From Oopsacas minuta (Eukaryota; Animalia; Porifera): 64,000 nt of DNA. The first letter of the stretch is position 1; each line of letters begins with the position of its first letter. Position numbers and translations under genes: made by a program. Location: contig JAKMXF010000088.1 of the NCBI GenBank assembly GCA_024704765.1, forward strand, positions 620,001 to 684,000, given 5' to 3'. The notes below the pieces were generated by a model. That model ran no database searches. It was given only the letters and a program-made list of their open reading frames with translations, and was not told where the DNA came from. Positions 15,801 through 53,002 of this stretch are shown in pieces.

Positions 15801-18800
15801 GTGTAGTACATACCAATCATGGTAACTATGGAAACCGGTGTTGGCAAATATATTCATGGTATACAGTGAGCACCCGTTATATCGAAGCTCAAGTGACCGC
15901 GATAATTACTTCGATATAACGGGAGTTGAGTGTTTATCTGTAAGTATTACCTTCTCTATAATTATCCTGTAAGCCGTTAGCGAACAAAACTGAATTACTC
16001 CAATCACCCACTATAGCTTCTACAGGATCCACAGGTATAGATGCTAGTTGTAGATTAAGTAACATGCCAAGAAGACATCCACAAGCCCTGTGTGTATCTA
16101 CTAACCAACACCACTCGGTTGGAAACTCAGTCGAAAGTGGAAGTGGTGATACAAGCAATGGATGAGAAATTTCTAGAATACAAAAGAATAAATTTCCAAT
16201 AATGACATATTCATGCGGCAGGTAAACTTGATGAGGTTGTTATACCTCCAATACTCCATTGGGCCTCTTGAGATTCACAGAGCATGCATATATCAGGAAT
16301 AGTTTCAACAGTCCTAGATAACTGTAGACATAGTTTTGTAATGGGATCGATTAGGTAGCTTAACTGATGTAGTGGAAATAACAATAGTCCGTGTGTAACC
16401 AATGGGATTATAGCGTTTGGAAAGTTGAGATCTACAGGGCAAGGAAAGTATAAATAGGATTGTTACACATCAATCAGTTTTTGGGAATTTACCGTTTATT
16501 AAATGTAGCTTTTCAGGATTTGTTAATGCGAGGAATTTTATTTTTTCTAAACATTCCAAACATCCAGGAAGAATCGTTTCCAAATGTTCTCTCAGAAATA
16601 TTTGTTGATTGTTAGTCTAAAATGAGTAATAAACACGTTAATAAAAAGTAAACAAAATATTGAAATCTGTGTATATGAGTTTTTCATTATGTTTATTTCA
16701 GGATTGTCATTAACAAATCCCGAGATTTCACTTTGTTCCCCCTCTCCAACAGTCCCCAACCTGGGTCATGGACGACAGTAGGTGGTCCACAGAATTTATA
16801 TAGGAATCACGGGGGCGAAAAAGGTTGGGGGAACCGCACCCTATTCTATCCGAAAACATCCATAGAAATCCCGAAGAAAAATAAATATATTACAGTGGAA
16901 TATTCCTTGACTTACCAACTCAGTTTTGATTGCAAAATTCGCGAAAATATGTTTATACAAGAGAATTAGAAAATCTCTAAAAAGTGAGATAATTTCAGGA
17001 GACATCCATTGGTTAGAAAAAGTGCTGCTGCCACTTGTGCCACTTTCAATTGGCTGGTTCTTAGATTCATCTATTTTCTTATCCTAAAATAATAAAAAAA
17101 TAGCTACAGTTAATACAAATGTTGAAGGTGTTACAGTCTACCCCCGTTATACCCAAGCTCAAGGGACCGCGATAATTACTTAGATATGAGCGGGTATTTC
17201 TATATCTAACAAGAGTTAAATTTACATATAAACAAACCATAATACAATAACCAACACAAGAATATTATACACACAAATACAAACAAACAAACAAGCTATG
17301 AGTTCGACAATATTTCAAATTTGCATTGCTGGAATAAAACGCACAACAAGCAATCAAGAATTCTCACCAAAAGACTATGAAATATGTATAACACGTGAGT
17401 CACAAATTGGTACATGGTCTCTGCCACTTTTCACACTTACAGCCAATTATGATCCCAGTGAAATGGCGCGTAATTATCTGTCACAAATAGCTGGTATTGA
17501 TTGTGGACAAATATTCTCTATAGATGTAAATAGCGAAGTGAAAGATCCGACGCATTACGTCACATTATGCTATGTGGCCACTGTGCCACATGAATCAGAA
17601 CCACAGACCAGACCATCAATTGAAGTGAAATTTGAAACACTTTCAAACACAATAGATATGTGCAATGACGCGTCCATTTTCAACCAATCACATACACAGA
17701 TTTTACGCGCCATAATTTCCTGGCTTAACGACCAACATTCCGACAAATTTATCCGAATCGATAAATTATTCAAAGGAGGAAGTGAAGCTTTTTCAATGCC
17801 AATTTCAATAAAAGCTCTCCTTGACAACCCTTTGAGCCAAAGGAATTTGGCACCAGAAGAGGATAAACTATTGGTTGCACTTGATAATCCAATATTCCAA
17901 TTTCTAATAGGAGAACAACTAACCACTTAACACCTATGAATCAATACAATCTTACCATATATGCTAATATATATTTCATCATTACATCTATTAGTTGAAT
18001 TAAAGTTGAGTTCTTTTGCTCGACATTTTGAATTGGGTTGCTTGGTGACATTGTGTCGGGGATTAGTGGGATTAGTAAACCAATTACTGTCTGTTCGTTG
18101 CCTAAACTGTCGAGCATGACTTGAAGTTGAATTAACTAGGAAATACAAACACGAATTACAGTTGTACCAACAAAATTACACTAAACGCTACCAAAGCAAT
18201 GTCCAACGTTTCTCCGTTTCAGATAGGCAAATTCAAAATGCAAATAAATAATTGAGTTAGACAGTTGAAAGTGTTAAAATCGAATTCTACGTCCCTGATT
18301 ACACCTAATTAGCAGGTGGAAACTAATCTCTAGGATATTTTTGAAATATTCAACTAAATGTGTGAAATATGATTAATCATATGATAAATAAGTTTGATAA
18401 TAATTAATATAGAATTGACCTCTTTAATTAGATTATGGATAGATAAACAATAATAATTAATAGAATATTTGTAGACCGTAGTTCCTATTCTCTGACACAC
18501 TAACTAATCTCCCGTTTGGAGTTATAGCTATTCCTTTGGGGTAACATAACATTCCTTGTTGGTGTCCCTCTGTTCCTATCTTGTGTAGGAGATTGCCTTC
18601 TGGAGAGAATACCCGAATTGTGTGAGAGTCCTCATCGCTAATACCAAAGTTATTAAGTGAATCTAGACAGAAGAAAAGAGGGCATAACACATCCATTCCT
18701 AGTCCACTGGTAATAAGGGAGTGTAGCTTGTGTCCTTCTAGGGTTAGCACGTGCATACAGGGGTTGTTATATGGGCACAGTATGTACACGTGGTCACGTG

Positions 18801-21800
18801 ACACTTTAACATCAAATGGTTTTGTCATAGACTGATGAGTAATGTTACGGAGATGGTTCAAGTCTGTGTCGTGTACGCTGATTCTGTCGTTATCCCTATC
18901 TGCTATAAACACGTGACCGATGGGATCTGTTGTTAGTTGACGAGGGAAATTGAATTGTCCGTTGTTTGATCCCACACTTCCTATCTTCCTAACAAGACTC
19001 ATATCAGTTAGTGTGAATTGGTTAATAGTGTGATCTACACAGCAGCTGACATACACATTCTCTCCATGTATAGCTATACCGTATGGCATATCCAGCTGTT
19101 CTTCACCCAGCTGATTGAGGTACTCTCCTGTATCAGAGAATATCTCTACTCTGTGATTGGAAGTATTAGCTACGAATATTTGGTTAGTAGCTTCATGTAT
19201 AGCTACACCTCGTGGATCATTCAACTGGCCAGGACCTGAACCTTTCTTCCCAGTAGCGATAGTAGACGTCTGGAATGTGGAATACTTTGGTACACTCACT
19301 AGTTCTTGCACAATATCTCCGAGGTGGGAAATACAAGTTTCTAATTCACATGTGTCACACTGCCACTTTAATACGCTCTCAATAGGATTGTTGATCCGCA
19401 GTTCTCGTAATTTGTCCTCCATCTCTTTGGTAATTCTCTCCTGCATGAACTGGAGGGGATTTTCCTTCAAATGTCCCTGTAGGTATGCTTGAGCCTCTGT
19501 CAGTTGTGTAGTCATTTCTTGTCGAGCGATCTCTGCGACTTTTTTCATCTTCTCGCATGTTGTGGACTTGTCTTAGTAGCTGAGCTCTACGGACGTTCAG
19601 TAGCCCTATGAGACCATCTATTGTGTAGTTAATGTGTGTCTCTATGGGGTCTACGACTTGAGGGGCAATAGCGAAGCGTTCTGCCATTTGATTTGTATAG
19701 AAGAAAAATTGAATTGTTGATATAGGAATTGGTTGCTAGGGAAATCTTAGTTATTTATAGCTGTTTATAATTTGCAGACAAACAAACAACTATTGTAGAT
19801 TATGTGAGTATATTTTTAGCAAAACAAACACGAGGTTATGCAAGTGTATGTCGTTGTGTCTCGTTGCTAGGAAACTGTAAGGAATGTGATAGAAAGTTCA
19901 TTCTTAGTTATTTTGTATAATGGCAACTTTACAGTTTTGAAAAACAGAATATCCAATTTCCTAAAATAATGAGATATGAAATGCTGCCTACCCGCTTGGC
20001 TAGATGCACATGATGCGATGCTGAAACAAGTACATCATTATCATTAACAGGGCCTTTCTATTTTTAATTGAGATAATATAGAGAGAGAGAGAGAGCACAG
20101 ATTTTGCCCATTTTAGTGTTACCTTCATTGAAATCACGGAAAATGTGAGCTCTGTATATATTATTCCTTTGTAAATATAGTTATACACGAACTTACTTGT
20201 CCTTTTGTTAGCTGAGTCCACTGTGAATTGTCTTTGGGAATCAGAGACCACAAGAAATGAAGTCTCTCATTTAGCGGGGGAATCAAGAGAGTAGCGCCTA
20301 GTTCTAACGTCTCGTTAACAGCCTAGAAATAGTCAATACTCTAGTCGGATGGGACATACGGTATAACGAGTTTCATTTTATTGAATAATTACTAAGAATT
20401 AACTAAAGTGGAGAATTGAATTTTACCAGCTTGAATTTGGTAATGTTGCAAACAGTAGACTCTAAATATGCGTAATTCAGGGTAAGCCCATTTTGATACA
20501 ATTAACCAATGAGTCACGGTATCGCTCGATTAACTGGAGCTATTTAATACAATCAACTCCCATTATATCAAAGCTCAAGGGACCGTGATAATTACTTCGA
20601 TGTAACCGGAGTTGACTGTACTAGTAGCATACTTGCCAACCTGAGTGAAGGAAAACGCGAGAAGTACATATTTGTATTAGGCTGAACTAGGATAAAGGGG
20701 GATATTAAAGGTTTTTGACAAGTTTTGGCGGGACAATACCCTCAACGTACGTCAGAAAATGCGAGACAGTTGGCAAGTATGTACACATGTGTCAGTTTCT
20801 GCCGAAGTGTCCCATATAACCGGTGAGCCTATTAATGGGAGCTATTAGGCTTATAAACCCACGTTTTGGATTGGCTGAGGAGTAGAAGAGTCCATCAATT
20901 TGAATAACAGCTGTCCTAGAGGTATGATCTCTTGACCAATAGAATCCTGGGAATTTGATAGGAATACTGAGCACTTTAGATGCAGTTTGAGTAGGTTTAG
21001 ACAGTCAACAACAAATTCAATGTTATCCCTAAACAACAAGTAAACAACAACAAAATATTATCGCTAAATACAATGATAAATAACTTACTCCAAAGAGTCA
21101 AAAGGTAGGTACGAGTCTGCATCAAAATTAGTGCAATATTTCTCTAAGAACTCTCTTAACATCTTGAAAGTGTTTTCATTCATGTCTAGGCAGAATGGCC
21201 AATTCATCTGAGAGTTATTCCTGTGAAAAATTAATATCTTTTGAAAAGTAAATATTCAAATACAGTGGAACCCCGGAAATATGATCACCCACGGGACCGA
21301 GAAAAATGGCCGTAATTTCGGGGTGGCCGTAATTGTGAAACTTGTTAATGTCTCTAGTATATTAAACGGGACTTTAAACAGTGCCCGGTATATCGAGGTG
21401 GCCGCTATTCTGGGGTGGTCGTTAAGCGGGGTTCCACTGTATATGGCAAGTTTTGGTGTGGTTTAAGTCTAGGGGTGTTAATCATTTTCACGTGATTACA
21501 ATTACAAGCAATAATATCAAACAATTACAAATATCATATTCACTCCCATCCCTAGACTTAACACCCCAAAACACAGTTATATTTCCAAACTAACAAATCT
21601 GTTGGCAAGGCTGTCCAGATAATGCTATGAGAAGTGCCAGCAGAAATTTGATTTATATTCCCTGATTCAGGTGTTATAATCTTAGTAGGTGAATATACTG
21701 GAGTGTTAGCGTGTCCAAGACCGCATTGACCGATGTTGTTACTACCCCACGCGTACACTGTGTGTTCTAGTAAATAAACAAATAAACAAACATTAATCAT

Positions 21801-22971
21801 ATTTATTCAAACAATCCAACTAATAAACAAACAAACAAACAAACTTTACCTTTAGTAAGAGCTAGACAATGACCATCTCCAACAGATATATCCACAATAA
21901 ACTCAAATGATAAAGTATTCATCTCCCAAGGTTCTAGACACGGACCCTCTGGCTCAGTACCTCTCCCTAGCGCGGAGCCTGACCCCCAGGAGTAGACCTA
22001 TAACATATGTAGCTGTCGTGTTAACATGTAAATTTAATTATTGTATAGAATATATTCGCACCTTTCCAGTAGTTGAAAGAGCGATTGAAACATGGTTACC
22101 AGATTGTATCTTAGATATGTGTAATCGAAGTGATGGAATTTCCTAAAATAGAATTATTAAAAGGTGTGAAATAAGTCAATATATAACTTACTCTAGGTAT
22201 CAATTGTCTGTTTGTGTTCCCATGACCAAGTTTACCTCCTTCTCCATTCCCCCAAGACCATACAGTTTTATCCTGACACAATGCCAACGTGTGTGTGTTG
22301 CCACATGACACCTGAGCCACGCCACTTAAAGTGGACACTAGTTTTGGTCTTGTGTAGGATAGCGTATCATTGTGGCCTATAAGGAAAGAAAGAATAACAT
22401 TGATAGTTTCAGTTTGTTTGTATATTTATAGTTCCATATACACCCAAATATTGGAATTATGTGTGAAAGTGTTTGTTTAATGGGATCACATAGGGACCAG
22501 GTCAGGTGTTGTTCCGATTAAGCAGTGGCTATATTAAGTGGAGTCTATTGTATGATATAAACACATAAACAAGTAAACAGACCCAGTTTTCCACTATCAC
22601 CATCTCCCCATGTGTATAGTTCTCCTTTAATAGTTATAGCTGCACTATGCTTCCAACCAACCGACACTGTCTTGATTATCTATATGAGTATAGTGTTAAT
22701 TGTTCGTGTGTTTGTTTGTTTGTTTGCTTGTTAGTTAGTTAGTTAGTTAGTTTGTTTGTTTGTTTGTTTGTTTGTTTGTTTGTTTGTCTGTTAATCTGTT
22801 CGTGTGTTAGTTTGATTGTTTACATATTTGTGTATTTGTTTGTTTGTTATTTACAGTTGATAACTTACCTTTCCAATAAAAGGCCCTTCTATTAATTTTG
22901 GAGATTTTTGTGTTGTAGAATAACCATGTCCCAATCTACCACTATCTCCTAAACACAATAATAATAATATC

Positions 22972-23009
<38 letters not shown>

Positions 23010-25576: not shown

Positions 25577-25766
25577 AGGAATGTCAGATCAAACTAATAC
25601 AATAATATATATACAGAGAAATAAATTCGATGTTTTGAGTGTGAAAATATCCAAAATTCTTTGAGAGCAAAATATAAATCATAACGTCAACAACAACAAC
25701 AAATAAACAAATAAATGAGCAAATTGATACATGAATACCATATGATAAATATGATTAATCAAGGTG

Positions 25767-27407
25767 TTACTTAATCGGATTAGAAATTATCTCAGTATAG
25801 ACTCCATCGTCATGATCAGTGAAATGAACTTGTTTATGCTGTTTCTTCTCTTTATCAGCTGTGTACTCGATAAGGTTCATAAATGCTACCTATATGATAT
25901 ATGACACTTAATTAACCATATTTTCACACCTTTTGGTGAATATTCATAATTGTCTTATAGATTAGCTTTCACCTGCTAATTAGGGGTAAACAGGGACATA
26001 GAATTTGATTTTGACACTTTCAAAATACAAATATGGCCCCCCCCCCAACAGTCAAAGTAACACATATCCCATCGGTAATATCGAGGTAATTATCAGGGTG
26101 CATTCAGCTTCGATATAACAGGAGTTGACTGTAGTTCTAATTCATTCGAGAATATACCGGAAATACAGACACCTATAGTTTCAGTTACTAATTGTCCAGC
26201 TTAAAGAGCCTTCATGTGACCAATTATCTCACCTTAAGAGGGTCTCCACATGACCAGAGGAACAGGAGAGACACCAGAGATATGATCTCAGTTTTATTAC
26301 TACTGACCATTAAGTAATCATACTCATTGGGTACATGAATTATGAAGAAGTTATCGTGTAACAAACTGGAACTAATTTTAGATATGTCGTAGAATGGAAT
26401 TTGACGTTTGCATTCAAAGGTTTTTGGTTCTAAATTGCAGAGTCCGTGTTCTGTTATCACCAATGTTCTCTAAGTAAACAAATAAACAAATAAATAAACA
26501 AACACATAAGGGAACAAAAGTCAATGAATAAGTCAACAACAACAAACAAGTAAGTAAACAAATAAGTAATTATTAACAAGAGTATAAACAAGCATCAACA
26601 AACAAACAAACAAACAAACAAACCTCCTGTGCTTTTCCCTTTCTATTAACCTTAATAATCTTATCGGAATAATATACCAAATTACATCCTAGCTTCCTCA
26701 TAACACCTGGCATATTTGATATACCGACACTATCCTTAATCAGACCCTTAGTGACACTAGATTGTCTCCTTTTCTTTCTACGCATAAATGGCTTGTCTGT
26801 TGCTCCACACATGGCTGAAGTGGTTGAGTGGATTTCTGAGAAAAAGTGTCGACCTGATTCTGTGTCAATCGTAGAAGTTACAGTTCGTTTCTCTATTGCA
26901 TGCTGGATCCAAGATCGGGGTTGGAAGAAACAGAACTGGCGATCCTATAAGTATATTCATAGCATCACACCTCTGTAAGATGAATATTGTGTAGAGTAAT
27001 TCCATGTAATTGTTTGTTTGTTTGTTTATTCGTCAGTTTATTTGTATACTTGTTCGTAAACTTGTATAACTGTTTGTTTATTGGTTTGTTTACTTGTATA
27101 TCTGTTTGTTATTTGTTTGTTTCCCTGTTTATTAACTTACAGCTACAATATTAAACAGTGTATGTGTAGGAGACACAGGGTCCATTATTTGACCTAATAT
27201 CAGCTCCCCTGTACCTGGAGTATTCAAATTACTTCCTAAAGCAGTTGGTCTCATTTTTGGTACAATACTTGGGGAACTGTTATCTATTGATTTGATTACA
27301 AGAGGCCCCATCACCTCTTCGTCTGAGGCAGAATCGGAATCCTGGTCGACAGGCGGAGGGAATACTCCCCCTACAGAGTTCTTAGGGGTCAAGTCACTCT
27401 CTGCCAT
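25767..27407 (-). CDS. Stand-alone myosin tail homology-1 (TH1) domain protein, 4 coding exons
   Basis: Exons 27141-27407, 26625-26944, 26233-26469 and 25767-25889, all phase 0 with GT-AG boundaries. RRKKRRQSS...YYSDKIIKVNRKGKAQERTLVITE...KRQIPFYDISKISSSLLHDNFFIIHVPNEYDYLMVSSNKTEII matches the myosin-I TH1 pattern. No motor or IQ exons were found. Confidence 0.7.
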
Positions 27408-27718
27408 CAATTGGAACTATAACTGGAACTAATTAAATATCATTTAACAACATATAACACATAGGAGTTGGAAACCACTACACTAATGGTTTAATGCCTC
27501 TTATATGCCATAATTCTCTATTCCAAACCGTAGCCAGGAAACACTCAAAACTATGTGGCATGGAATGTGTCCCCAAGCCCAAAAGTAGCACAATTACGAC
27601 ACAGAGTATTTACGAATGATAACTAGTCATATAAATATCATTGATATAACTAAAAATATGAATTCTAAAATATTACAGTTTCATGCATTGAGGTGTCATA
27701 AAAGTGACGCGTGCCACT

Positions 27719-29265
27719 TCATATATCCATCCTTGCCAACTCGGATGTATACACATCAATAGATTCTTGGTCAAACAACACAAACGACACATTTTTAACA
27801 CTTGAGACACATCCTGATTCGAAATATCCTTTAATAGATTGAAGAATGCATTGTGCAGCTGTTTGCTTCGGGAAATTATTCCCCCCAGAAGAAATGGAAG
27901 GAAACGAAATGCTTTTGATGTTCTTATCACTAGCTAGTTTTAAGCACGACTTTACGGATTTGTTAAGAAGTGGGAGCGAATCTGTCTCTGACCAAGAGGG
28001 ACCATGTACATGTATGACGTACTCACAGGGGAGATTGCCAGCACCTACATAAGGACAGTAAGAATCATTTTGAGAAAAATGGTTTCCTTATATGCTTATG
28101 TAACCAAGGATGGTGGGTTAATGTATTCCATGAATAAGACAAACAAAAAAGTGTGCGAATTAACGAGGTTCCACTGTATATGCAAATTCGCGCTCCAAAC
28201 AAGCGAGGAGTGTCCAAAATGACCCAAAACAACATCCAAGCAGTTAAACAAAATCCACCATCTATGGTTAATAACTAATAAGAATATAAAGATATTCACC
28301 TGTAATAGTTGCTTCTCCAGTTTTCAGTGATACATGATGAGAATTGATCGCTGTCTGGAGTGGAGCTCCGCCCACTACTCCAAGAGCTGTACCCACCTGT
28401 CCTCCCAGACCTATACTAGAGGAGCAGGGGTGCACGACAGCGTCACATGATATATGAGCTAGGTTACCTTGTAGAACCTTTAGTGTTTGTCCATTGGATA
28501 GTACCCTACGGATTATGGAGGAATTAGTCAAGAATAGAAACTTAAAATTTGGTATGTAGGTGTGAAATAGCGTAAATAACAATATGTAAAAATATCAAAT
28601 TGATATATACACATATCTCTGAGAAAGTGTATGAAACACGTCGATAAGATTGGGGGGGTCTATATGCTGATATTATAATAGCTAATTTGGTTCATAACAC
28701 TGTAATTCATTGGTAAAATTCTATTTTTAGTACGGGGGTTAACTCACTTCTGAGAGAGGACATTAACTGGTCCCACAGGGTCCCTCTTCTTAGCAACAGC
28801 TGTGGAATTTGTCTGAAGTGGAAATAACCCAACGAATCCTGGTGCTGGAGCCATTGGTTTCAATTTCGGTTTGGATTTTGGTTTGGATTTTGGTTTGGAC
28901 ACTTTTTTCACACTAACAAATGGTGACACCTTATGTTTAGTTGGCACTAGTGATGAGTCAATATGTGGCATAATCCCACTACTTGGAATTGTGACACCTT
29001 TCAGCATGGAGTTCAGCTCGCTATCATTCGATACAGCTAGCATAATGTGTCGCGGGTTTATACGTGCACGTTTGTTATCACGAGCCGCGTTCCCTGCGAG
29101 CTCAAGAACTTCTGCGGTTAAGTATTCAAGGACAGCGGCTAGGTAGACAGGGGCTGCCTTCCCTAGTTGTTGTTTTGTTGATACTTTACGCATTTGTCTG
29201 TGTACCCGACTGACTGCGAATTGTAGACCTGCTCTCTTGGAGCGTGATTGTCTTTTGGATGACAT
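27719..29265 (-). CDS. MACROH2A1: Core histone macroH2A, 3 coding exons, about 349 aa
   Basis: Exon 28748-29265 encodes the H2A fold ([28 protein letters not shown]) plus a Lys/Pro linker. Exons 28300-28505 and 27719-28044 encode the macro domain (DAVVHPC...GGQVG; [24 protein letters not shown]; [12 protein letters not shown]). Exon phases join correctly. The paralog number is not meaningful here. Confidence 0.93.
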
Positions 29266-29400
29266 TTGATAGCTAGCGGGTAAATATTTTTAACTGTTAT
29301 AAGCTCTGTCATAATTAGCAGTGATATACAAGAGGAACAGTGCTAATTGACCCCCTGACTATATGTCTAGCACCTACCATGAGTATGATGAAATAAACAA

Positions 29401-29540
29401 ATGTTAACTCCTGTTATATCGAAGCTGAAGGGACCGCGATAATTACTTAGATATGACCGATGGAATATATGTTACTTTGACGGTTTGGAACCATATTTGT
29501 ACAATTTCACACCTCGATATAAGCGGGTATTTCTAAATGT
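29401..29540 (+). mobile_element. MITE family A copy just upstream of macroH2A
   Basis: AACTCCTGTTATATCGAAGCTGAAGGGACCGCGATAATTAC...GTTAGATATAAC. Confidence 0.75.
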
Positions 29541-29751
29541 CCGTGTTAGATATAACTGGCAAGCATAGGAGGATGTCCACAGAATGTGTTAAAATTTGTA
29601 TAGGGGGTACTGTTCCTCTAGACACCCTGCGGATGCCATATGGGTGCAAATCCCTGATCTCCTGTTGTGCTATGTAAGAATACAATATGAATCAATAATA
29701 ATAATAATAATTTATCCATATAAATAACAAGCATATCATCTAAAATTTGTC

Positions 29752-29838
<87 letters not shown>
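29752..29838. repeat. (CAA)n microsatellite
   Basis: Pure CAA run of roughly 29 units between NEDD4 and macroH2A. Shorter runs lie at 22970-23010 and elsewhere. Confidence 0.95.
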
Positions 29839-29839
<1 letters not shown>

Positions 29840-29945
29840 CAACAAACTTTAACATAGCATAAGGATAATATAGCTTATTAAAACAGATTGAAGTAAATAC
29901 CTCACAATTTGTTATTATTATTTGTATTATTGTTTACTTCCTGTG

Positions 29946-35994
<6,049 letters not shown>

Positions 35995-36913
35995 AACTAT
36001 TACCACTAATAGCTAAAGTAATAAGACTAAACAGCAGTAAGGATTCTGTAGTTTGTTATAGTTACACAAAATATGCGTTTGTTAACTCAGAGATATGATT
36101 AGTATACATTGAACTATCATAGCACAGACAGGTGTCATGTGGTTTATACCCTGTGGGAGTCATGTTATAGTCTGGGAACTAAGTGGGGCTAGGAGCGAAC
36201 CCATTGAGGATCGATTTTATTTGTAATTGGACAAGAAAGTTGGGACTCGGAAGATTAACGTGGTGGATCGGAGATCATTTGGGGGCAGCCGACGACACTG
36301 CTATGAGAAGCGAACCCCAGGCGGTGAAACAAAATACCAGAGGAAGCTTTTGACACGGACAAGAGACTCGAAACGCCGATAAAATCTTACCCCCTCCAAT
36401 ATCGAGACAATTAATAACAATATTAAACATTAAAGTATCAGAATATATCAACAAGAACTATATATATGTGTATATTGGAACTAATTAGCACAAATAATAA
36501 TTCAGAATAAATTCTGTATATTGAAAGTGGAACATATTCATATACGACCAGAGAGCATTGTCATAGAGTGTGTCGCTTTCAAAATAACTTGAGTTGGCAC
36601 ACGACAATCGCAAGTGGTTGTAACTAATAATACTATCGTCTAACTTTCATAATAGCATGTTAATAAAGAGATCCATTGTGTCCAGTGGGTAGCATTTTAT
36701 TGAGCGAGTTTTGAAGATTTTAGTTCTCCCTTGGAGATAAAGGAATTGCAAGATATGTCAATAAATTCATCGATAGTAAACAGATAAAAAGTTGTATTTA
36801 ATAAACACCTTTTATGGAACCAATTTAGCCCAAATTGGGAGTGTTAGAAGGCAAATAAATAAATAAAAATTTGCAATATTGTATGATTATTAACTAACAA
36901 AATTGTGTTGCAA

Positions 36914-39900
36914 TTACAAAAGTCTACCGCGACACTTTGGCATGCCACATAAACATTGTAACACCTTATTAGGCACACTTCCAATCTCATAATTGTAATC
37001 CCAAGTTAGTTCCGTATTAGCTTTGATGCGTTTTTTCGCGAAAAAAGCAACCCATGGGAACCTGAGGTCATGAGTATCTAAGAAAACTGTGTGTGTGAAT
37101 ATGTTAGGCTGACAGGAATGGTTGAAGTATCTGCCAATGTTCCCAACGAATTTTGCATCCATGACGTATGCTCCCTTTTCTGAATGTAGGCTGCGTATGT
37201 TGCGGTATGTGTTAGTGGTGGCATGAAGTGGTGTAGTGGTTTGGGTGTGTGGATAGAAGAAAGTGTCCTGTATCACTGGTGTCGCCTAGAAATGAGATAG
37301 GTGGAAAAATGTGTCGCATTGTGAATGTATAAGTTTTGTTACCCAATCATCTTCATCAGAAATAACAAGTACTTCAGCTTGAATACTGATTGGTTGTTCA
37401 GGATGAGATCCGTGTACTTGAGCTATAAAAGGAAGATCTTCACTAGTAAGCTCACTTGTAGATTCTGGTATTTTACCCTTAGTGACTGCTAGCAATAACT
37501 ACAGGGGAAATAACACTTGCGTCATATCCGATTTGAGCAACTATAAAGCCACCAAAGTGGCAGACCAAAGGTGTTATATACCATACAACAGGATTTGGTT
37601 AATGGGTCACTCAATGAGCCATGTGTCGAACCGTGACCCATGGTCCATTATATACAGTGGACTCCACTTAATAGAGCGCTGTTAATAGGAACATCCAGAT
37701 GTGATCCTATTAAGTGGAGTCTATTCTATTTATAGAGCCTACTTGTTGTGGGTTGGAATTGGAGTAGGATTCAGAGCCAATTAGCAAGGTGTCAGCCTTC
37801 TCAAGGAGATCAGCTGATTGGGATACATCTCCATTTGTTAACTTAAGCGCTGCTTCACACCATTCCTTAGGAAACCTGTCCTCTATCATTCCTAGCTTAG
37901 CTGATTCTATTAATGCTTCTGATTCATCAGCTAATTCTACCTATAGAATATATCCTGTTGTTATTTTGTTGTTTGTTAATAAAATCTCAAATTACAGCCT
38001 GGTGCGGACATAATTTTCGCTAATGATTACATGCACTCTGATTGCCCTAATATGATAGATGTGAAATATGATAGGTGTCCTAATCTCTAAAGGTGTGAAC
38101 AGGAAAGTGAAACTATAGTCGGCACAGTAAAAATAGTACCAAAATATTTTCCCTATCATTCACAACAGTTTCCTCCAGCTGTTGTTCTGAAGCACTAGAC
38201 TCGAAATCTGATTCGCTGTGACTGTCCAATAGAATTACGTCCTGTAAATCCATGTATCTTTCGGTGTCTGATAGGCGTAGTTTCTGAGAGAATTCCTCCT
38301 GTTACAAATTACAAATATCAAAGTTGTCCCGTACAGTCCGCATTGTATTAGGGGATTTGTAAGAAACTTAGCCTCGCGGTATGAGGATAAGGATTTTACC
38401 TCTGAACATGCCACGGGGAGTGAGGTTATTGAAAAGTGTCAAATCCGGACTGGGAACAACAATAAACAATCATTAAGTAAACATTTACAAACCGGATTCG
38501 TTGTTGGTTGTTGCAAAGAATTTGTAATAGGAATGTTCTCATTGTCCCTTTCATCTTTATTATCTTCCTGTAAAGCGCCGTAATAAGGCTCATACCTACA
38601 AATAAACAACATAAATATTTGTTTATTTGTTTATATTATCCCAATTTATTGTAGAACTGGTAAACAACAACAATAAACAAACGAATTTAATCAAATAAAC
38701 AATTAATGGTACGAGTTACATAATTTTCTGATACTTCGTCACGAATGCAGTAAATGCCTCCAGTTCATCTCCAGTGTTGAAACTATCACCTTTAGAACTG
38801 GAACTAATATGTTTTAAGGGGTGTATTTGACAAGAACCATCTGATAACGACAACACAATCTCACCATGTGGAAATGAAGTCGATCTTTCAGGAATCAAAT
38901 CAAAATTAATAATATCAATATTATCACACATTTTTTCCTTCGAGATACAAGCCAAATGATTTATCGACAGATCCCACACGGACAACTCTCCCTTCTCACT
39001 TAGCGTATAAACCACCAGTGGGTGGATACGTGACCACATAACACGTTTAAGCGACACAATTTCACCACTTGAACATGTCAAAATCGGGAATTTATACTCT
39101 CGGTTAAATATAGCGAAAAATCCGCCCGCATAACTAACGATAAAATAATCAGGAGCAAGCGGATGGAAGTCCAAGTAGGTTACGGGAGTGTTTTGATCTT
39201 TGATACAATGGGACTTGGGGATCGGGGGCTTGCCAGTGTGCCTACAGCCATGCATAACTAATCCATCAAGCGTTGCTATGTAATAATGATTCAAATCGAT
39301 TGGATGGAATATCAAAAGTGTCGCTAACACATTCGTCTTTAATTTGTAATTCGCGCGTGAGGGGGTGACAATTGCGATTGATGTGGACCGGATTAGCTTG
39401 ACACGAGCCCCTGGGGACATACCTAAGTCCACAAGGGAACCACACATTTCTGGATTCGATACTTCTGCTAGCACCCAGATATTTATAACACCTAAGATAT
39501 CAATAGATGCAATTTGGAATGATAATCCGGTCATTGTAATATCATCGAATAACCTTGCGGTTTTATGCGTTTCATCTGCATTCTTTGGGCGTGATATGGT
39601 AACTATGGAGGAGATTGGCGCCATATGTGAACCCTCGGTGGAAAGCATTGCAGTGGAGTATGAAGCAGGGCGTGTACGGAACCCATCTTCAATCGGCGAA
39701 GGTGTCAGAGTGTCAATTGTGTCGCGGAAATCCCAGACACAAATAGAGCCATTATCCATACCAGCAAAAGCTAAAAATAATCGCTGTGGACTAAAACAGC
39801 AACATACGGGTGTTGACTCACATTCCATCAACCGTTTTGGTTGGTAGGCATCATTTATGTTCCAGTGTGCTAATAGTCCTTTCCTAGCAACAGATAATGT

Positions 39901-42900
39901 AAAGGTATTTATAATTGAAGGAGCATAAGCAATGAGAAGAGAATTGGATTGCGTTTTAGAAACAGCTGTTGCGACAATTTCCCGTTTAGCAAGGATTGAT
40001 ATTTTGTTGAGATGTATCGGGTTGCTTTGTGTGAATTCAAAAAGTGGCATGGTGTCTGCATGCGACACATTTTGCACTAAATTTTGTGTATTTTCATCTA
40101 GGACGATACACATAATTTCTGAAGTTTTGAAGAAAAATGATAGAAAATTTGATGAATTTTCTGTCACTTCGAAATCAAGAGGTGTTTGTAATGTGTCCTC
40201 GATACCTGTACCACATGAACATTCACCACCTTCTGTGGAATGTTGTGTCCACTTTTCACGTATGAAAATTGTGTCGGTTTGGGTTTCACGGTCGAAATTA
40301 TCATCGTTACATTGCACTGCCACTTGTCGAGTCATATCGCGCCCAACTTGCTTAATATAAACATCGTATTCTGAAAGTGGAGAAATTTCTATCAAATCGA
40401 TCGACTGAAAATCCAAAACTAAAAGTGGCATTAAGTGGCTCAATCGTGTTTTTGTTTTCTCTATAATAGAATCCTTAACAACCACCTCTGTCTTCGGAAT
40501 GTGGAATTTTATAAACCCCCTGCCACTTAACTGAATTTGTGGTTTTTCTAAACTAATTTCTGATTTGGGTGGCACAACTTTGGGCTCATTTATTTGAACA
40601 ACCATTTGTTGATTTTCCATGTGAATTGCTTGTTTTATAAGATCGATATCATATTCTTGTTTCACAACAGAACCACTTCCATTTGTGTCGTCTGTACCAC
40701 TTGACACCTCTTCGAAATCCTCGTCATAACTTTCAAAATCTTCCGCATATGATTCAACTTCATCCTCGTCATTTAATTCCACCGGCTGCATTCCAATTGC
40801 AGGAACCGTATCTAGGATATCCTCTGGAATTTGAGATGGCTCCAACTTGGAGATATGGCTCTCAAGTGGCTGCGTTGAGCCACTTTTGTCAGATGCCATT
40901 TTTGTACTTTTTGTATTTTCAGTTTGTTTTGATTTTTCCTGTTTTCGAGGAATTTCATATTTGGCCTCTTTTGTTGTTTTATGTTTTTGCACAACTTTTT
41001 TAGTTTCTTTTGGAACTATCACTGATTTATCTTTAGTTCTGGTTTCAGATTTGAACTTTTTAGTGTCAAGTGGTATTTTAAGTCCTTCCTTTCTTAGGTG
41101 TGAAGTGGTTTCACTCTTTTTAGCCATAAATGGTTTGAGTTCGCTCGATTTCCAAGTTTCTTCTCTATTCTGGTCGCGCGCGCGTCCCTTAGATCTTCTC
41201 TCTGCCATATTTGCTAACAATGTGTGTATAAATACGATAAATAATAGTGTAGTGTAAATAAAAATAGATTTGGTATACACGCATTCAAATTTTCCTTCCC
41301 CAGATAGTAGTATACTGGAAATTGGATATTCTGTTTTCCAAAACTGTAAAGTTGCCATTATACAAAATAACTAAGAATGGACTTTCTATCACATTCCTTA
41401 CAGTTTCCTAGCAACGAGACACAGCGACATACACTTGCATAACCTCGTGTTTGTTTTGCTAAAAATATACTCACATAATCTACAATAGTTGTTTGTTTGT
41501 CTGCAAATTATAAACAGCTATAAATAACTAAGATTTCCCTAGCAACCAATTCCTATATCAACAATTCAATTTTTCTTCTATACAAATCAAATGGCAGAAC
41601 GCTTCGCTATTGCCCCTCAAGTCGTAGACCCCATAGAGACACACATTAATTACACAATAGATGGTCTCATAGGGCTACTGAACGTCCGTAGAGCTCAGCT
41701 GCTAAGACAAGTCCACAACATGCGAGAAGATGAAAAAGCCGCAGAGATCGCTCGACAAGAAATGACTACACAACTGACAGAGGCTCAAGCATACCTACAG
41801 GGACATTTGAAGGAAAATCCCCTCCAGTTCATGCAGGAGAGAATTACCAAAGAGATGGAGGACAAATTACGAGAATTGCGGATCAACAATCCTGTAGAGA
41901 GCGTATTAAAGTGGCAGTGTGACACATGTGAATTAGAAACTTGTATTTCCCGCCTGGGAGATATTATGCAAGAACCAGTGAGTGTACCAAAGTATTCCAC
42001 ATTCCAGACGTCTACTATCGCTACTGGGAAGAAAGGTTCAGGTCCTGGCCAGTTGATTGATCCACGAGGTGTAGCTATACATGAAGCTACTAACCAAATA
42101 TTCGTAGCTAATTATTTCAATAACAGAATAGAGATATTCTCTGATACAGGAGAGTACCTCAATCAGCTGGGTGTAGGACAACTGAATAGGCCATGGGGTA
42201 TAGCTATACATGGAGAGAATGTGTATGTCAGCTGCTGGGGAGATAGCACTATTAACCAATTCACACTAACTGACATGAATCTTGTTAGGAAGATAGGAGG
42301 TTGGGGATCAAACAACGGACAATTCAAATTGCCTTATCAACTAACAACAGATCCCATCGGTCACGTGTTTATAGCAGATAGGGGTAACAACAGAATCAGT
42401 ATACACGACACAGACCTGAACCATCTCCATAACATTACTCATCAGTCAATGACACAACCAGTTGATGTTAAAGTGTCACGTGACCGCGTGTACGTACTGT
42501 GCTCAAATAACAACCCCTGTATGCACGTGCTAACCCTAGAAGGAGACAAGCTACACTCCCTTATTACCTGTGGACTAGGAATGGATGTGTTACGCCCTTT
42601 CTTCTTCTGTCTAGATCCACTTAACAAATTTGTTATTAGCGATGTAGACACTCACTCAATTCGGGTATTCTCTCCAGAAGGCAATCTCCTACACAAGATA
42701 GGAACAGAGGGACACCAACAAGGAATGCTATATAACCCCCAAGGAATAGCTATAACTCCAAACGGGAGATTAGTTAGTGTGTCACATAATGAGAACTACG
42801 GTCTACAAATAATCTATTAGTTAATAAATTTGTTGTTTTGCTCAGTATCCTTTTGAATTATTAGCCAAAGGTGTGAAAATATTATTAATCATATGATAAA

Positions 42901-48726: not shown

Positions 48727-49788
48727 TTAATTATCCTCAACTAATCCAAAAAGTTTATTCAAACAAGAAGGATCAAGTTTACAGAGATCAAAATCAAATG
48801 TGGTTTTTGTCAGGGTATAGTGACCAGTCGATTCGACAACATTCACAATTTGTTGGAGTTTATTGGTGTCGGCTATGTTGTTCAATTGGCGATGAAGGTT
48901 TTTAAGTGTCGTTGTGTCCCAATTATTTGTCACGTCCATTTTTTCCACCTCATCCAATTGACTAGTACGCTTTTTATGAGGTTTTTCAACATTATCCAGT
49001 TTTGCTCGTTTTATTGGTTTCTCTTCTATTTTGTCTGTTCGCTTCTCTTTTTCAGGTTTTGGTTTAGTCTCAGATAGCAAAATTCCCCCGCCTTTTATTA
49101 GGCGGGATTTAAACTCTTCATTTGGAGTTTGGAATGTCAGCGTCTCACTACGTAGTTGATTTATAGGCGGGTCTTGCGCATTTGGTAGAAGTAAGTCATA
49201 CTCGAATAATTGAGATTTCAAATCGTCTTTATTTCTAAAGAATACTTCTATCCGCATATTGAAACTACCATAGCCGGACTCCTTTACCTGATAGGGTGGA
49301 TCTTTCACACCTGTAGAGAGGGAGGAGTTATAAATGGCACTAGATATAATGTGTCGAGGGTCAAATATATACATGTGTCGTAGTATTCGCGTGTATGAAA
49401 CTCGAAATGATGGTTTATTATATTATAAAGAAAATTGTAATCAAAATGTAATCGAAAGTAATTGTAATCGATTACAATTCAATCAAATTGCCTCATTCAG
49501 TCGTTTACATACATTTAAAAGGTGTGAAAATATGAATATATACCTCTCTTAGACTTTGAAAAACTTTCATGAAGATGGAACACAACTTTTTCAACAAAAT
49601 GTTTGATTTCGGCGTTGTCCTCACCCCTTACAAGAACGGTCCAATCATGAGTAAATCCATCAGGTGTCGGTTTCTTTCGCCAATTAGCCGTATGTCCCAA
49701 TACGAGTTTAACTTGGACAGCCTAAAAATAGATTTGTACAAGTCATAGTTCCATATTGGTAACTATAATATAATCTCAAACTCACCAT
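48727..49788 (-). CDS. MLLT3: AF9/ENL-family YEATS + AHD protein, 3 coding exons
   Basis: ATG-only exon 49786-49788; exon 49544-49721 ([10 protein letters not shown]...[11 protein letters not shown]...[14 protein letters not shown]); exon 48727-49310 ([15 protein letters not shown]; [16 protein letters not shown]...[11 protein letters not shown]). It is co-orthologous to MLLT1/MLLT3. Confidence 0.9.
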
Positions 49789-52900: not shown

Positions 52901-53002
52901 AAGTGGACGAGGTTCAGGTGGTTTCATGCCACTCTTATTAGTGGCACTAGGATCAAGTGTTAGTTCTTGTTGTGGGAATACTTTAGAGTTGCATTCTGCC
53001 AT
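49913..53002 (-). CDS. EDRF1: Erythroid differentiation-related factor 1 homolog, intronless, 1029 aa
   Basis: IKTLFKIPF...LAVHRIGKTLIFD; PINVLTGIDLWLDNLMNNVPEV; FLKANCTKEGHTYWL...IIKLYDLT; TPR-like C-terminus. Confidence 0.88.
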   Translation of the reverse strand: MAECNSKVFPQQELTLDPSATNKSGMKPPEPRPLSNVDQAIKYSHIFPQLDIIASSRHIKTLFKIPFSQEPFSLAVHRIGKTLIFDDFFLNLNSQKNKNPKNENLEKDLTISRVLSLPELTSDIVPVSKQGVSLELELNQAIVPVTQMRNKPRQRRYSLGDDDIRGPSKPPGLVLSSTPQPLSLTTIGGMNVSYGPSLRDIFWRFEDYSMLLGCDLPIFGMGTHPAVSLYIQDATMPINVLTGIDLWLDNLMNNVPEVLMAYRVENIIRYCEVVDLDTIPTLPNSNFSPDLISNICSNILHFLKANCTKEGHTYWLLRDSDEDIIKLYDLTSLVNTKNEREMPQQFENPFVDPVALLFYKVATQMCRKLSPNSDTYPEELGTVKHMLEQVIRLLKGSERGSKLELYAYEVLTEIFLGAEFIDEILQPELELEQSKSVKNPKKRSKKRDPKQDSQKSNYLVPITDSMPISWPIENLTEDEYGTIPRVTPPPIKLGSNEERARVSLDYITTSLELTRKFQNETEFMKKYICEMMRKAAVCFYILSQSNFTLDMLGKVVKYAKYCLRTISCIGDSKNAKSISLLRFKILQLLGDALCLIGKSQNISTHQEDFLEKDPELKPILSFSSNQIIFDSFIPPVHISSNPSDNILNSIDCYLFIETRSKNSSRIISKPLSKRLGNSYNEIGLLSMDSILNQKELSSDTKLELAKSAFTYFQNAIHYFNQSDDALNLVLVYSNSARLMRICAYQSTGKNIFTPQVNEYYNEAISAYQSGIKLLGNVDNPELCNNLKHELSNVKLQLIELMFSQELKPNITNEISHLLVQTISILEEIFPAKNDTIFSLSLAYHYFGKIEFEKLKDSIRNKDEKSKTFFTLSEKYFLKSNHILEPLDTNNCQLLIQKSKNFLQLYDLIIFHTYSSKLHIKQKQISNALKYITELIAIFLTNIPGIFPSNDTLLELCDYGAQTMIKLFSLTKVMNKQFGTKSNISKEIIKLEEYLDKFSGFKILENIINYDTFVLSQILSVCLELNILIS
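50675..50687 (+). promoter_or_regulatory. X-box palindrome inside the EDRF1 coding sequence
   Basis: GTTGCCTAGCAAC, identical to 62662-62674, about 890 bp upstream of the AF9 ATG. Function is not established. Confidence 0.25.

What the first reader, a model, noticed from the sequence alone, without database searches (positions are those of the whole stretch)
18457..42820. Duplicated coiled-coil/NHL genes with hypervariable propeller loops: candidate diversifying recognition system
Seen: 18457-19961 (-) and 41318-42820 (+) are a ~1.5-kb inverted duplicate. The ~270-bp non-coding upstream part differs at only about 3 bases and the first ~47 codons look identical. The proteins nonetheless differ at about 50 residues, roughly 45 of them in the propeller. 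The changes recur at equivalent positions in each blade as multi-base codon swaps (AN-TS-N-H vs AN-YF-N-N; QL-DM-P-Y vs QL-NR-P-W; SC-CV-D-H vs SC-WG-D-S; QF-NF-P-R vs QF-KL-P-Y; ML-CY-P-K vs ML-YN-P-Q), while frameworks keep even synonymous sites. Established: the residues around the xxPxG loop and after the second strand form the top, ligand/RNA-binding face of NHL propellers (Brat, TRIM71). Inference: coding DNA more diverged than its promoter implies strong diversifying selection or patchwise gene conversion within a larger family. That would be an antibody/VLR-like variable surface on a cytosolic scaffold (no signal peptide), plausibly for innate immune or foreign-RNA recognition.
Basis: partly seen in the sequence, partly recalled or inferred. 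Interest (0 to 1): 0.82.

Follow-up and report, generated by a model that had tools for sequence, protein, structure and literature searches.

The report
Hypervariable-faced NHL propeller genes, glass sponge
Two inverted copies (one frameshifted) of a small intronless gene belong to a family of over a hundred glass-sponge genes for a paired propeller-shaped protein whose partner-gripping residues change faster than silent sites and are swapped between copies, the mark of an inherited recognition repertoire whose targets are unknown.

Summary
The inverted duplicate is real (arms 18451-19961 and 41317-42826). Copy B (41591-42820, +) is an intact 409-codon gene.

The genome is the glass sponge Oopsacas minuta. 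These are two of more than 100 intronless coiled-coil + NHL-propeller genes. Each has a compact ~270-bp upstream region that is conserved in blocks.

I defined 30 ligand-contact positions in advance from the solved LIN41-RNA complex, five per blade. At these positions dN/dS is 3.3 (CI 2.0-6.0); across the rest of the propeller it is 0.68. Four paralogue pairs from two other assemblies gave the same pattern (2.2 against 0.49). Of the 45 A/B propeller differences, 23 fall on these 30 positions.

The copies are mosaics. A resembles B and L002 in the 5' 420 nt and L004 in the 3' 600 nt, and a recombination test gives p<0.001.

So diversifying selection and gene conversion are both supported. An immune or foreign-RNA role is untested: I found no RNA evidence, and the variable face is rich in aromatic residues with mixed charge, unlike the basic face of LIN41.

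This scan has already reported the same family on several other pieces of this genome. I found no published description in the papers searched.

The parts
41591..42820 (+). Copy B: intact intronless gene, 409 codons plus stop. Residues 1-140 are helical (predicted coiled-coil dimerisation arm); residues 142-409 form a six-bladed NHL propeller.
   Evidence: ORF; translation; Pfam NHL E=4.6e-20; AF2 propeller pLDDT >90; Foldseek best match TRIM71/LIN41 NHL, TM 0.87
41317..41590 (+). Upstream region of copy B, block-conserved across the family (putative promoter/5'UTR). It holds TATAAATA at 41519-41526 (72 nt before the ATG) and CCTAGCAAC at 41407-41415 and 41538-41546.
   Evidence: 3 differences from copy A in 274 nt; alignable blocks in most O. 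minuta paralogues and in genes of two ENA assemblies; motif coordinates
42014..42817 (+). Propeller of copy B. The 30 contact-equivalent codons are residues 156,157,159,175,176,199,200,202,216,217,246,247,249,264,265,288,289,291,305,306,334,335,337,352,353,381,382,384,399,400.
   Evidence: DSSP strands; mapping to LIN41 RNA-contact residues; dN/dS 3.30 against 0.68
18457..19687 (-). Copy A: the same gene with a +1 frameshift. Codons 1-48 are in one frame and the remaining ~361 codons are open in the next frame down to the same stop position. The 3' 600 nt are L004-like.
   Evidence: Alignment; translation with stops; ORF 18457-19548 of 363 aa; mosaic counts; only 6 private nucleotide states, against 7 in B
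19540..19545 (-). A6 run (A5 in copy B and its relatives): the site of the frameshift. The insertion puts the ATG at 19546-19548 in frame with the propeller.
   Evidence: In one search, table 4, the X2 contig covers 19540 without a deletion, while the X1 contig there carries the deletion (B/L002-type).
19688..19961 (-). Upstream region of copy A, the same family promoter block (TATAAATA at 19752-19759 by the repeat's register).
   Evidence: Inverted repeat I2, 99%; alignments

Best explanation
Copies A and B are two dispersed members of a large, lineage-specifically expanded family of intronless genes in the glass sponge Oopsacas minuta. A carries a frameshift but shows no excess of private changes.

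Each unit is a compact ~270-bp upstream region with a TATA box plus a 409-codon ORF. The protein has no RING or B-box. It consists of an N-terminal helical arm, predicted to pair antiparallel into a homodimer, followed by a six-bladed NHL propeller.

Five positions per blade are held under diversifying selection: the two residues before and the one after the proline of the xxPx turn, and the two residues after strand B. These are the positions that touch RNA in LIN41. The scaffold, the bottom loops and the helical arm are under purifying selection. Gene conversion or unequal recombination moves tracts between paralogues, so each gene is a mosaic with its own contact signature.

The result is a germline-encoded repertoire of different binding faces on a constant, probably bivalent and cytosolic, scaffold.

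Shown here: the family, the fold, the site-specific dN/dS, the mosaicism and the frameshift.

Inferred: the proteins bind diverse, fast-changing ligands. These could be non-self protein or nucleic acid, mobile elements, or allogeneic determinants in a syncytial animal. How binding would be signalled is unknown.
For: Family size: 103 scored matches out of 912 first-look candidates, about 20 intact at 75-89% identity. 1549 NHL-repeat candidates genome-wide. 974 relatives in the public protein set.

Fold: AF2 propeller pLDDT >90; TM 0.87 to the TRIM71 NHL domain.

Dimer: ipSAE 0.64 against a best control of 0.00. That mark was reached by 21 of 30 solved homodimers and 0 of 23 monomers. The three runs agree on at least 97% of contacts, and partner pLDDT is 76.

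Variable sites: mean entropy is 1.36 in BC loops and 0.85 in DA loops, against 0.3-0.5 elsewhere. 33 of the 45 most variable positions are shared with 39 proteins from other assemblies.

Selection (Nei-Gojobori counts, 8 disjoint paralogue pairs): top loops 2.11 (CI 1.38-3.42), bottom loops 0.23, N-terminal arm 0.36. The LIN41-contact-equivalent set gives 3.30 (2.02-6.01) against 0.68 for the rest. The replicate in two ENA assemblies gives 2.19 (1.2-4.27) against 0.49.

A/B pair: 23 of 45 propeller differences fall on the 30 contact positions, Fisher p=4e-15.

Contact positions average 32% pairwise identity against 88% for the rest of the propeller, and all 21 genes have a unique signature.

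Mosaicism: A and L004 differ at 3 sites in nt 700-1000, where A and B differ at 22. After nt 650, 17 of 18 informative four-taxon sites group A with L004. Long shared runs reach permutation p<=0.002 in 10 pairs. The PHI-type test gives 0 of 1000 permutations, also when restricted to third positions outside the top loops.
Against: No expression evidence. None of the runs that hold the stretch is recorded as RNA, and the data are contigs only. No ligand, no effector domain and no induction data are available.

The dN/dS values come from pairwise counting, not from a recombination-aware likelihood model. Whole-propeller dN/dS is only 1.14 (CI 0.85-1.54).

Synonymous difference is also about twice as high at the contact codons (0.129 against 0.066), so some local mutation or ancestry effect cannot be excluded.

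The assignment of loops to the top face rests on propeller topology and sequence mapping, not on 3D coordinates.

The dimer prediction is a model score only, and TRIM-like coiled coils are well represented among solved structures.

Copy A itself may be non-functional.
Confidence: 0.75

Rival explanations
1. Neutral decay: redundant young duplicates and pseudogenes drift under relaxed constraint, and the A/B differences are noise, with copy A a dead gene.
For: Copy A is frameshifted. About a third of the 30 best loci are truncated or contain stops. Whole-propeller dN/dS is close to 1.
Against: Relaxation gives omega near 1 everywhere. Here omega is 3.3 (CI lower bound 2.0) at 30 pre-defined positions and 0.2-0.7 elsewhere. 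The pattern repeats in other genomes. A has no excess of private changes (6 against 7 in B). Most A/B differences in the 3' half are shared with the intact gene L004.
Confidence: 0.04
2. A housekeeping regulatory family: like TRIM71 and Brat, each paralogue binds a different endogenous RNA or protein for post-transcriptional control. The divergence reflects past sub- or neofunctionalisation, not an ongoing arms race.
For: The closest solved folds are the RNA-binding NHL domains of TRIM71/LIN41. The variable positions are exactly the RNA-contact positions. NHL surfaces are known to re-evolve different RNA specificities (PMC5908797). A partly conserved core remains on the face (W202, R249, Y381, H219, N267 are common).
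Against: omega >1 persists among very young pairs (dS 0.05-0.1) in at least two genomes. Turnover by birth and death and conversion is high. Copies cluster by genome, not as orthologue pairs, which is unusual for fixed endogenous regulators. The face is not basic.
Confidence: 0.13
3. A selfish or mobile cassette: the promoter-plus-ORF unit spreads as a retrogene or transposon-borne gene, and its variation reflects element lineages.
For: The gene is intronless, carries its own promoter, is dispersed and inverted among ordinary genes (H2A, YEATS, EDRF1), and has sharp homology edges at -274 and just after the stop.
Against: No terminal repeats, target-site duplications, poly-A tail or transposase/RT were seen next to either copy. 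Homology ends at the stop codon and does not run into a 3'UTR. Mobility would not explain site-specific omega >1 on the ligand face. An earlier follow-up in this scan (s1-270230) also rejected a transposon.
Confidence: 0.04
4. Targeted mutation, not selection: the contact codons are mutational hot spots, or are rewritten by a dedicated diversifying mechanism.
For: Synonymous difference is about twice as high at contact codons in both data sets. Two-base changes occur in 11 codons where roughly 6 are expected (my estimate).
Against: Non-synonymous difference is raised about 8-fold against about 2-fold for synonymous. No template repeats or a reverse transcriptase were seen nearby. The variants are stable germline paralogues shared between copies.
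Confidence: 0.04

Closest known systems
TRIM-NHL proteins (TRIM71/LIN-41, Brat, TRIM2/3, Mei-P26)
   Same: Same six-bladed NHL fold (TM 0.87, about 27% identity to TRIM71), preceded by a coiled coil predicted to pair antiparallel. The ligand-contact positions are the same repeat positions that bind RNA in LIN41 (PMC5908797).
   Different: No RING, B-box or filamin domain, so there is no evident E3 ligase activity. TRIM-NHL proteins are single-copy conserved regulators; this family has more than 100 intronless copies with a hypervariable, non-basic face.
Fungal HNWD/HET-E/HET-D NLRs with hypervariable WD40 propellers (Paoletti et al. 2007, PMC1805685; PMC2873952)
   Same: A beta-propeller scaffold with a few positions per blade on the interaction face under positive selection, diversified further by exchange of repeats or tracts between paralogues. 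These are cytosolic non-self recognition proteins in a syncytial organism.
   Different: The fungal proteins use WD40 repeats, not NHL; exchange is between repeats within and between genes; and the propeller is fused to NACHT and HET cell-death domains. The sponge proteins have only a coiled coil. Function is shown genetically in fungi and is unknown here.
finTRIM and TRIM5/22 (B30.2/SPRY variable loops; van der Aa et al. 2009, PMC2657112)
   Same: Lineage-specific multigene expansion of coiled-coil proteins whose C-terminal binding domain has loops under positive selection. They are intracellular.
   Different: The binding domain is B30.2, not NHL. RING and B-box are retained. An antiviral role has experimental support for some members.
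Lamprey VLRs / antibody variable regions
   Same: A constant framework with concentrated variability at ligand-contact positions, and copying of donor tracts.
   Different: Those systems assemble or mutate somatically and are secreted or membrane-bound. Here all diversity is germline-encoded across paralogues, and the protein has no signal peptide.

Membership tests
NHL-repeat beta-propeller (Pfam PF01436) | Significant match to the NHL repeat profile | tested here: met
   E=4.6e-20, 71 bits against a cut-off of 20 for B; 7.8e-20 for A's long ORF
NHL-repeat beta-propeller (Pfam PF01436) | Six-bladed propeller fold superposing on solved NHL domains | tested here: met
   AF2 model with 24 strands in 6 blades, pLDDT >90; Foldseek hits 8j72, 6fq3, 7qrx with E about 1e-23 and target TM 0.87
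TRIM-NHL (RBCC-NHL) E3 ligases | N-terminal RING finger | tested here: not met
   No RING family in Pfam at E<=0.01. Residues 1-140 are modelled as helices only.
TRIM-NHL (RBCC-NHL) E3 ligases | B-box zinc finger(s) | tested here: not met
   No B-box match. There is no conserved Cys/His cluster: C113 of B is R in the family consensus.
TRIM-NHL (RBCC-NHL) E3 ligases | Antiparallel coiled-coil dimer preceding the C-terminal domain | tested here: inconclusive
   Helix 14-98. The homodimer model scores 0.64 against a best control of 0.00, with antiparallel contacts centred on residue 27. This is a prediction only.
Germline diversified recognition repertoire (finTRIM, fungal HNWD and similar) | Large lineage-specific multigene family | tested here: met
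   O. minuta copies form one clade separate from the copies of other assemblies (SH-aLRT 97, quick tree).
Germline diversified recognition repertoire (finTRIM, fungal HNWD and similar) | Variability concentrated on the ligand-binding surface | tested here: met
   Entropy by loop class. All twelve named LIN41 RNA-contact residues map to the hypervariable repeat positions. Contact positions average 32% identity against 88% for the rest. The face assignment is by topology, not by coordinates.
Germline diversified recognition repertoire (finTRIM, fungal HNWD and similar) | dN/dS >1 at those sites with a constrained scaffold | tested here: met
   3.30 (2.02-6.01) against 0.68; replicate 2.19 (1.2-4.27) against 0.49; pairwise Nei-Gojobori counts with codon bootstrap
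Germline diversified recognition repertoire (finTRIM, fungal HNWD and similar) | Recombination or gene conversion among members | tested here: met
   PHI-type permutation 0 of 1000
Germline diversified recognition repertoire (finTRIM, fungal HNWD and similar) | Demonstrated binding of non-self ligands, or induction on challenge | not testable with these tools
   No RNA runs found. No paper links Oopsacas with NHL.
Somatically diversified receptors (VLR/antibody-like) | Somatic assembly or hypermutation | not tested
   Only contigs of one sample were available. All the variation seen is between germline paralogues.

The most novel reading that the evidence does not exclude
The RING-less coiled-coil/NHL family is a cytosolic innate-immune or allorecognition receptor repertoire of glass sponges. 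Dimeric propellers with individually tuned faces would detect viral, microbial, transposon or allogeneic molecules inside the syncytium. They may signal through partners such as the caspase-NHL fusions noted elsewhere in this genome. This would be the first recognition repertoire built on the NHL fold, and one of the few known from a sponge.
Probability: 0.3. Interest if true: 0.85.

Novelty: new variant of a known kind. Interest (0 to 1): 0.62.

Why it matters
Germline repertoires with a constant scaffold and a positively selected binding face are a hallmark of non-self recognition. Known examples include TRIM5 and finTRIM, fungal NLR propellers and plant NLRs. None has been described on the NHL fold, and none for hexactinellid sponges, which are syncytial animals with almost no characterised immunity.

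The two glass-sponge genome papers (PMC10280926, PMC10282587) do not mention NHL or TRIM proteins, and no paper in the searched library links Oopsacas with NHL.

If the family is expressed and binds diverse ligands, it gives an entry point to how an early-branching animal discriminates foreign molecules inside a shared cytoplasm. It would also offer a natural library of NHL binding surfaces. The 30 contact positions defined here make the hypothesis directly testable.

Tried and rejected
- **Expression and frameshift check by reads.** The single run search found only runs of unknown kind, stored as contigs. Laying them showed short, paralogue-confounded contigs. One X2 contig supports the A6 allele. 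No contig with copy A's own letters at 19301 and 19325 was laid. Nothing can be said about transcription.
- **Is the promoter more conserved than neutral sites across genomes?** No. Upstream identity to the ENA genes is about 70%, the same as at four-fold degenerate sites. Only block conservation can be claimed.
- **Whole-propeller dN/dS as evidence of selection.** It is 1.14 (CI 0.85-1.54) and not significant by itself.
- **Careful ML tree.** It did not finish in 288 s, so only the quick tree is cited.
- **One alignment row (L007x)** was given in the wrong orientation and is ignored.
- **Transposon reading.** No terminal structures or enzymes were found.
- **Pseudogene-drift reading of copy A.** Rejected on the private-change count.
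- **3D mapping of variable residues.** The structure tool gives no coordinates, so the face assignment rests on strand topology and the LIN41 alignment.
- **The large representative protein search** was not used: the word search had already settled family membership.


Full report
**1. The observation**

A repeat search finds one long inverted pair. Arms 18451-19544 and 41733-42826 are 94% complementary, and arms 19541-19961 and 41317-41737 are 99% complementary. The two segments are offset by one base.

Copy B (41591-42820, +) is an intact 409-codon ORF. Copy A (18457-19687, -) has A6 where B has A5, at 19540-19545. Read from its first ATG, A runs into stops after codon 48. The next frame is open to the same stop position, and the insertion itself puts an ATG (19546-19548) in that frame, giving the 363-aa ORF.

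For counting only, I masked the codon at the break. On that basis the copies differ at 72 of 1230 bases and 50 residues, 45 of them in residues 142-409. The 274 upstream bases differ at 3 positions.

Three details need correcting:
- The frameshift was missed.
- Synonymous sites are not frozen. There are 14 synonymous differences, with pS about 0.05 in both halves of the gene.
- Only 11 of 61 changed codons carry two changes, and none carries three.

Short-read contigs from the sample that holds this sequence include one (run X2) that covers 19540 without a deletion, so the extra A is probably not a long-read artefact. A second contig (X1) carries the deletion and looks B- or L002-derived.

**2. 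What the genes are**

Pfam finds NHL repeats in both copies and nothing else of note, and no RING or B-box. An AlphaFold model built on 54 relatives gives a long helix at residues 14-98 (pLDDT 50-75) and a confident six-bladed propeller at residues 142-409 (pLDDT above 90). Foldseek places the propeller next to the NHL domains of TRIM71/LIN41, Thin, TRIM2/3 and Brat (E about 1e-23, target TM 0.87, about 27% identity).

A homodimer prediction for residues 1-140 passes the tool's mark:
- The score is 0.64 against a best control of 0.00.
- That mark was reached by 21 of 30 proteins solved as homodimers and 0 of 23 solved as monomers.
- The three runs agree on at least 97% of contacts, and partner pLDDT is 76.
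- The contacts are antiparallel and centred on residue 27.

This is a model score and may reflect memory of TRIM-like coiled coils. The N-terminus ([16 protein letters not shown]...) has no hydrophobic signal-like stretch, so I infer a cytosolic protein.

**3. Organism and family size**

The closest database proteins are named Oopsacas minuta, a glass sponge, under labels such as 'TRIM71-like', 'NHL repeat containing' or 'hypothetical'. In the window's own 61.5-Mb assembly, protein B finds 103 scored matches out of 912 first-look candidates. About 20 are intact copies at 75-89% identity, several are truncated or contain stops, and dozens more lie at 30-47%.

The NHL profile alone yields 1549 first-look candidates, and all 150 that were scored exceed the cut-off. 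No other copy lies in this window. The neighbours are ordinary genes: histone H2A, a YEATS/AHD protein, EDRF1, a Tudor protein and an fn3 protein.

More than a hundred proteins at 62-65% identity come from two ENA assemblies, ERZ25072730 and ERZ25069837. Their source organisms are not named. In a quick tree the O. minuta copies form one clade separate from them (SH-aLRT 97). That pattern fits expansion or homogenisation within each genome.

**4. Where the variation sits**

I used the DSSP strands of the model to label the loops. In 21 O. minuta genes, mean column entropy is 1.36 in B-C loops and 0.85 in D-A loops, against 0.28-0.50 in the A-B and C-D loops and in the strands. Of the 45 most variable propeller positions, 33 are also among the top 45 in the 39 ENA proteins. 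In beta-propellers the D-A and B-C loops form the 'top' face; this is established topology and my own knowledge.

To obtain a set defined independently of these data, I used the LIN41-RNA structure paper (PMC5908797). It names Cys563, Arg564, Arg581, Ser582, Arg611, Lys628, Asp629, Tyr658, Trp660, Arg676, Arg707 and Phe722 as the RNA contacts.

In the phmmer alignment to chain 6fpt_A (chain index plus 415 gives the residue number; the residue letters check out), all twelve fall on two repeat positions. One is the two residues before and the one after the proline of the xxPx turn leading into strand A. The other is the two residues after the last residue of strand B.

Transferred to the six blades of B, this gives 30 positions. 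Of the 45 A/B propeller differences, 23 hit these 30 positions out of 268 (odds ratio 32, Fisher p=4e-15). Across the close subfamily, these positions average 32% pairwise identity against 88% for the rest of the propeller, and all 21 genes have a unique 30-residue signature.

The hypervariable positions are rich in Tyr and Trp (22% aromatic against 7% elsewhere) and hold both basic and acidic residues. Net charge over the 30 positions ranges from -2 to +5. This resembles a protein- or ligand-binding paratope more than the basic pocket of LIN41.

**5. Selection**

I used Nei-Gojobori counts summed over eight disjoint nearest-paralogue pairs, with a bootstrap over codons.

| Codon class | dN/dS | 95% CI |
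|---|---|---|
| N-terminal arm | 0.36 | 0.27-0.49 |
| Bottom loops | 0.23 | 0.11-0.52 |
| Strands | 0.72 | 0.47-1.07 |
| Top loops (defined by DSSP) | 2.11 | 1.38-3.42 |
| 45 sites chosen from ENA protein entropy | 3.5 | 2.2-6.3 |
| 30 LIN41-contact-equivalent sites | 3.30 | 2.02-6.01 |
| Rest of the propeller | 0.68 | 0.47-0.97 |

For the A/B pair alone, the propeller gives 1.7 (52 non-synonymous against 9 synonymous differences) and the N-terminal arm gives 0.27.

As an independent replicate I fetched the DNA of four paralogue pairs from the two ENA assemblies. There dN/dS is 2.19 (1.20-4.27) at the 30 sites, 0.49 for the rest of the propeller and 0.46 for the arm.

Whole-propeller dN/dS is only 1.14 (0.85-1.54), so the signal is site-specific. 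Relaxed constraint cannot give values well above 1.

One caveat remains. Synonymous difference is also about twice as high at the contact codons (0.129 against 0.066 in O. minuta, 0.164 against 0.066 in the ENA pairs). I cannot tell whether this reflects older ancestry of the variable patches, a pathway artefact in multi-hit codons, or a local mutation bias. The non-synonymous excess, about 8-fold, is much larger.

**6. Mosaicism**

Segment-wise difference counts show partners switching along the gene.
- In nt 1-420, A, B and L002 differ from each other at 3-7 sites per segment, while L004 differs from them at 13-22.
- In nt 700-1000, A and L004 differ at 3 sites, while A and B differ at 22.
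- L005 is very distant in the 5' part (33-50 differences) but close to B in nt 420-700 (10 differences).

Among the four genes A, B, L002 and L004, 17 of the 18 informative sites after nt 650 group A with L004. A GENECONV-style run test gives 10 of 210 pairs at permutation p<=0.002, including A/L004 over nt 633-802. A PHI-type incompatibility test gives 0 of 1000 permutations as low as observed, both for all informative sites and for third-codon positions outside the top loops.

So A and B are not a simple duplicate pair. They share a recent 5' part with each other and with L002, and they have different 3' histories. Copy A has only 6 private nucleotide states (B has 7, L002 and L004 have 12 each). 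There is therefore no sign of decay since the frameshift.

**7. The upstream region**

The 274 bases before the ATG align in blocks across most of the subfamily. L004, L005, L020 and L023 have different upstream sequences. The same blocks align in the ENA genes.

The shared elements are TATAAATA, 72 nt before the ATG (41519-41526), and two copies of CCTAGCAAC (41407-41415 and 41538-41546). Homology between A and B stops about six bases after the stop codon.

Across genomes, upstream identity is about 70%, the same as at four-fold degenerate sites. I therefore claim block conservation of a family promoter or 5'UTR, not extra conservation overall.

For the A/B pair, the upstream divergence of 1.1% is lower than the synonymous divergence of 5%. 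This could be promoter constraint or a short recent conversion tract from -274 to about +150. I cannot separate the two.

**8. How it most likely works**

Shown here:
- a large family of promoter-plus-ORF units;
- a constant dimer-arm-plus-propeller scaffold under purifying selection;
- five ligand-contact positions per blade under diversifying selection;
- exchange of tracts between copies.

Inferred: each gene encodes a cytosolic, probably dimeric, binder with its own specificity. The repertoire would track ligands that themselves change fast, such as foreign or selfish protein or nucleic acid, or allogeneic determinants in a syncytial animal. How binding would be signalled is unknown, because the protein has no effector domain.

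**9. Comparison with known systems**

The fold and the contact positions are those of TRIM-NHL proteins. The defining RING and B-box are absent, so this is not a TRIM and the database name 'E3 ubiquitin-protein ligase TRIM71-like' is misleading.

The closest parallel in evolutionary behaviour is the fungal HNWD/HET-E family (PMC1805685, PMC2873952). There, a few positions per WD40 blade on the interaction face are positively selected and repeats are exchanged. Further parallels are the finTRIM and TRIM5 B30.2 loops (PMC2657112).

The antibody/VLR analogy holds only for the framework-plus-variable-patch layout. Nothing here indicates somatic diversification.

**10. Novelty and earlier findings**

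No paper in the searched library combines Oopsacas minuta with NHL. The two glass-sponge genome papers do not mention NHL or TRIM proteins. A search for NHL, positive selection and propeller found nothing relevant.

Within this scan, the same family has already been reported on at least eight other pieces of this genome, including its promoter and mosaic structure. My analysis was done independently on this window's subfamily and agrees with those reports.

What is new here:
- the a-priori contact set derived from the LIN41-RNA structure;
- the replicate in two other assemblies;
- the frameshift in copy A.

I rate it a new variant of a known kind: a diversified germline recognition repertoire on a scaffold not used this way elsewhere. 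The function is unproven.

Noticed in passing
window 38716-41358 (-): An 880-aa ORF with only weak WD40-like matches lies head-to-head with copy B. Its first ATG (41358) is 42 nt inside the repeated NHL upstream block, so either its true start is further downstream or the two genes share a bidirectional promoter region.
   Followed up: partly
window 17298-17930 (+): A 210-aa ORF lies just 3' of copy A. Another first-stage note calls it Nudix/NrtR-like (s1-218406). Pfam gave no family at E<=0.001 in my scan.
   Followed up: partly
window 41407-41415, 41538-41546, 41519-41526 (and the mirrored sites in 19688-19961): CCTAGCAAC occurs twice, together with a TATAAATA box 72 nt before the ATG. All three are kept in most O. 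minuta paralogues and in genes of two other assemblies. A polypyrimidine-AG (CCTTACAG, 41396-41403) lies upstream. The binding factor is unknown; the resemblance to an RFX X-box half site is only my recollection.
   Followed up: partly
window 10845-10999, 22664-22874, 26994-27136, 30633-30791: Four or more dispersed arrays of the same short-period (4/8/12-nt register) simple repeat, reported as direct-repeat family D1.
   Followed up: no
window 6089-6216 and 29388-29515: A second, short inverted repeat (128 nt, 84% complementary) unrelated to the NHL genes.
   Followed up: no
window 28744-29265 (-), 46962-47438 (-), 48727-49374 (-), 49913-53002 (-), 59727-60500 (-): Ordinary neighbours appear as long single ORFs: histone H2A, a Tudor_5 protein, a YEATS/AHD (ENL/AF9-like) protein, EDRF1 and an fn3 protein. 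The NHL copies here are dispersed among housekeeping genes and are not in a tandem array.
   Followed up: partly
30 contact-equivalent codons of the NHL genes (window 42014-42817 and loci L002-L038): Synonymous difference is about twice as high at the contact codons as in the rest of the propeller, in both O. minuta and the ENA pairs. This is unexplained.
   Followed up: partly
window 19718-19902 in run X5 (a different coded organism and sample): A 186-nt contig from another organism's run matches the non-coding upstream block of copy A with 4 mismatches and 1 gap. Very similar promoter blocks therefore exist outside the sequenced sample.
   Followed up: no
L031:1353-2584 and 20313-21224: In the ENA contig that carries P0058, there are NHL gene fragments 8 kb upstream and a hAT-transposase-like gene 9 kb downstream.
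   Followed up: no
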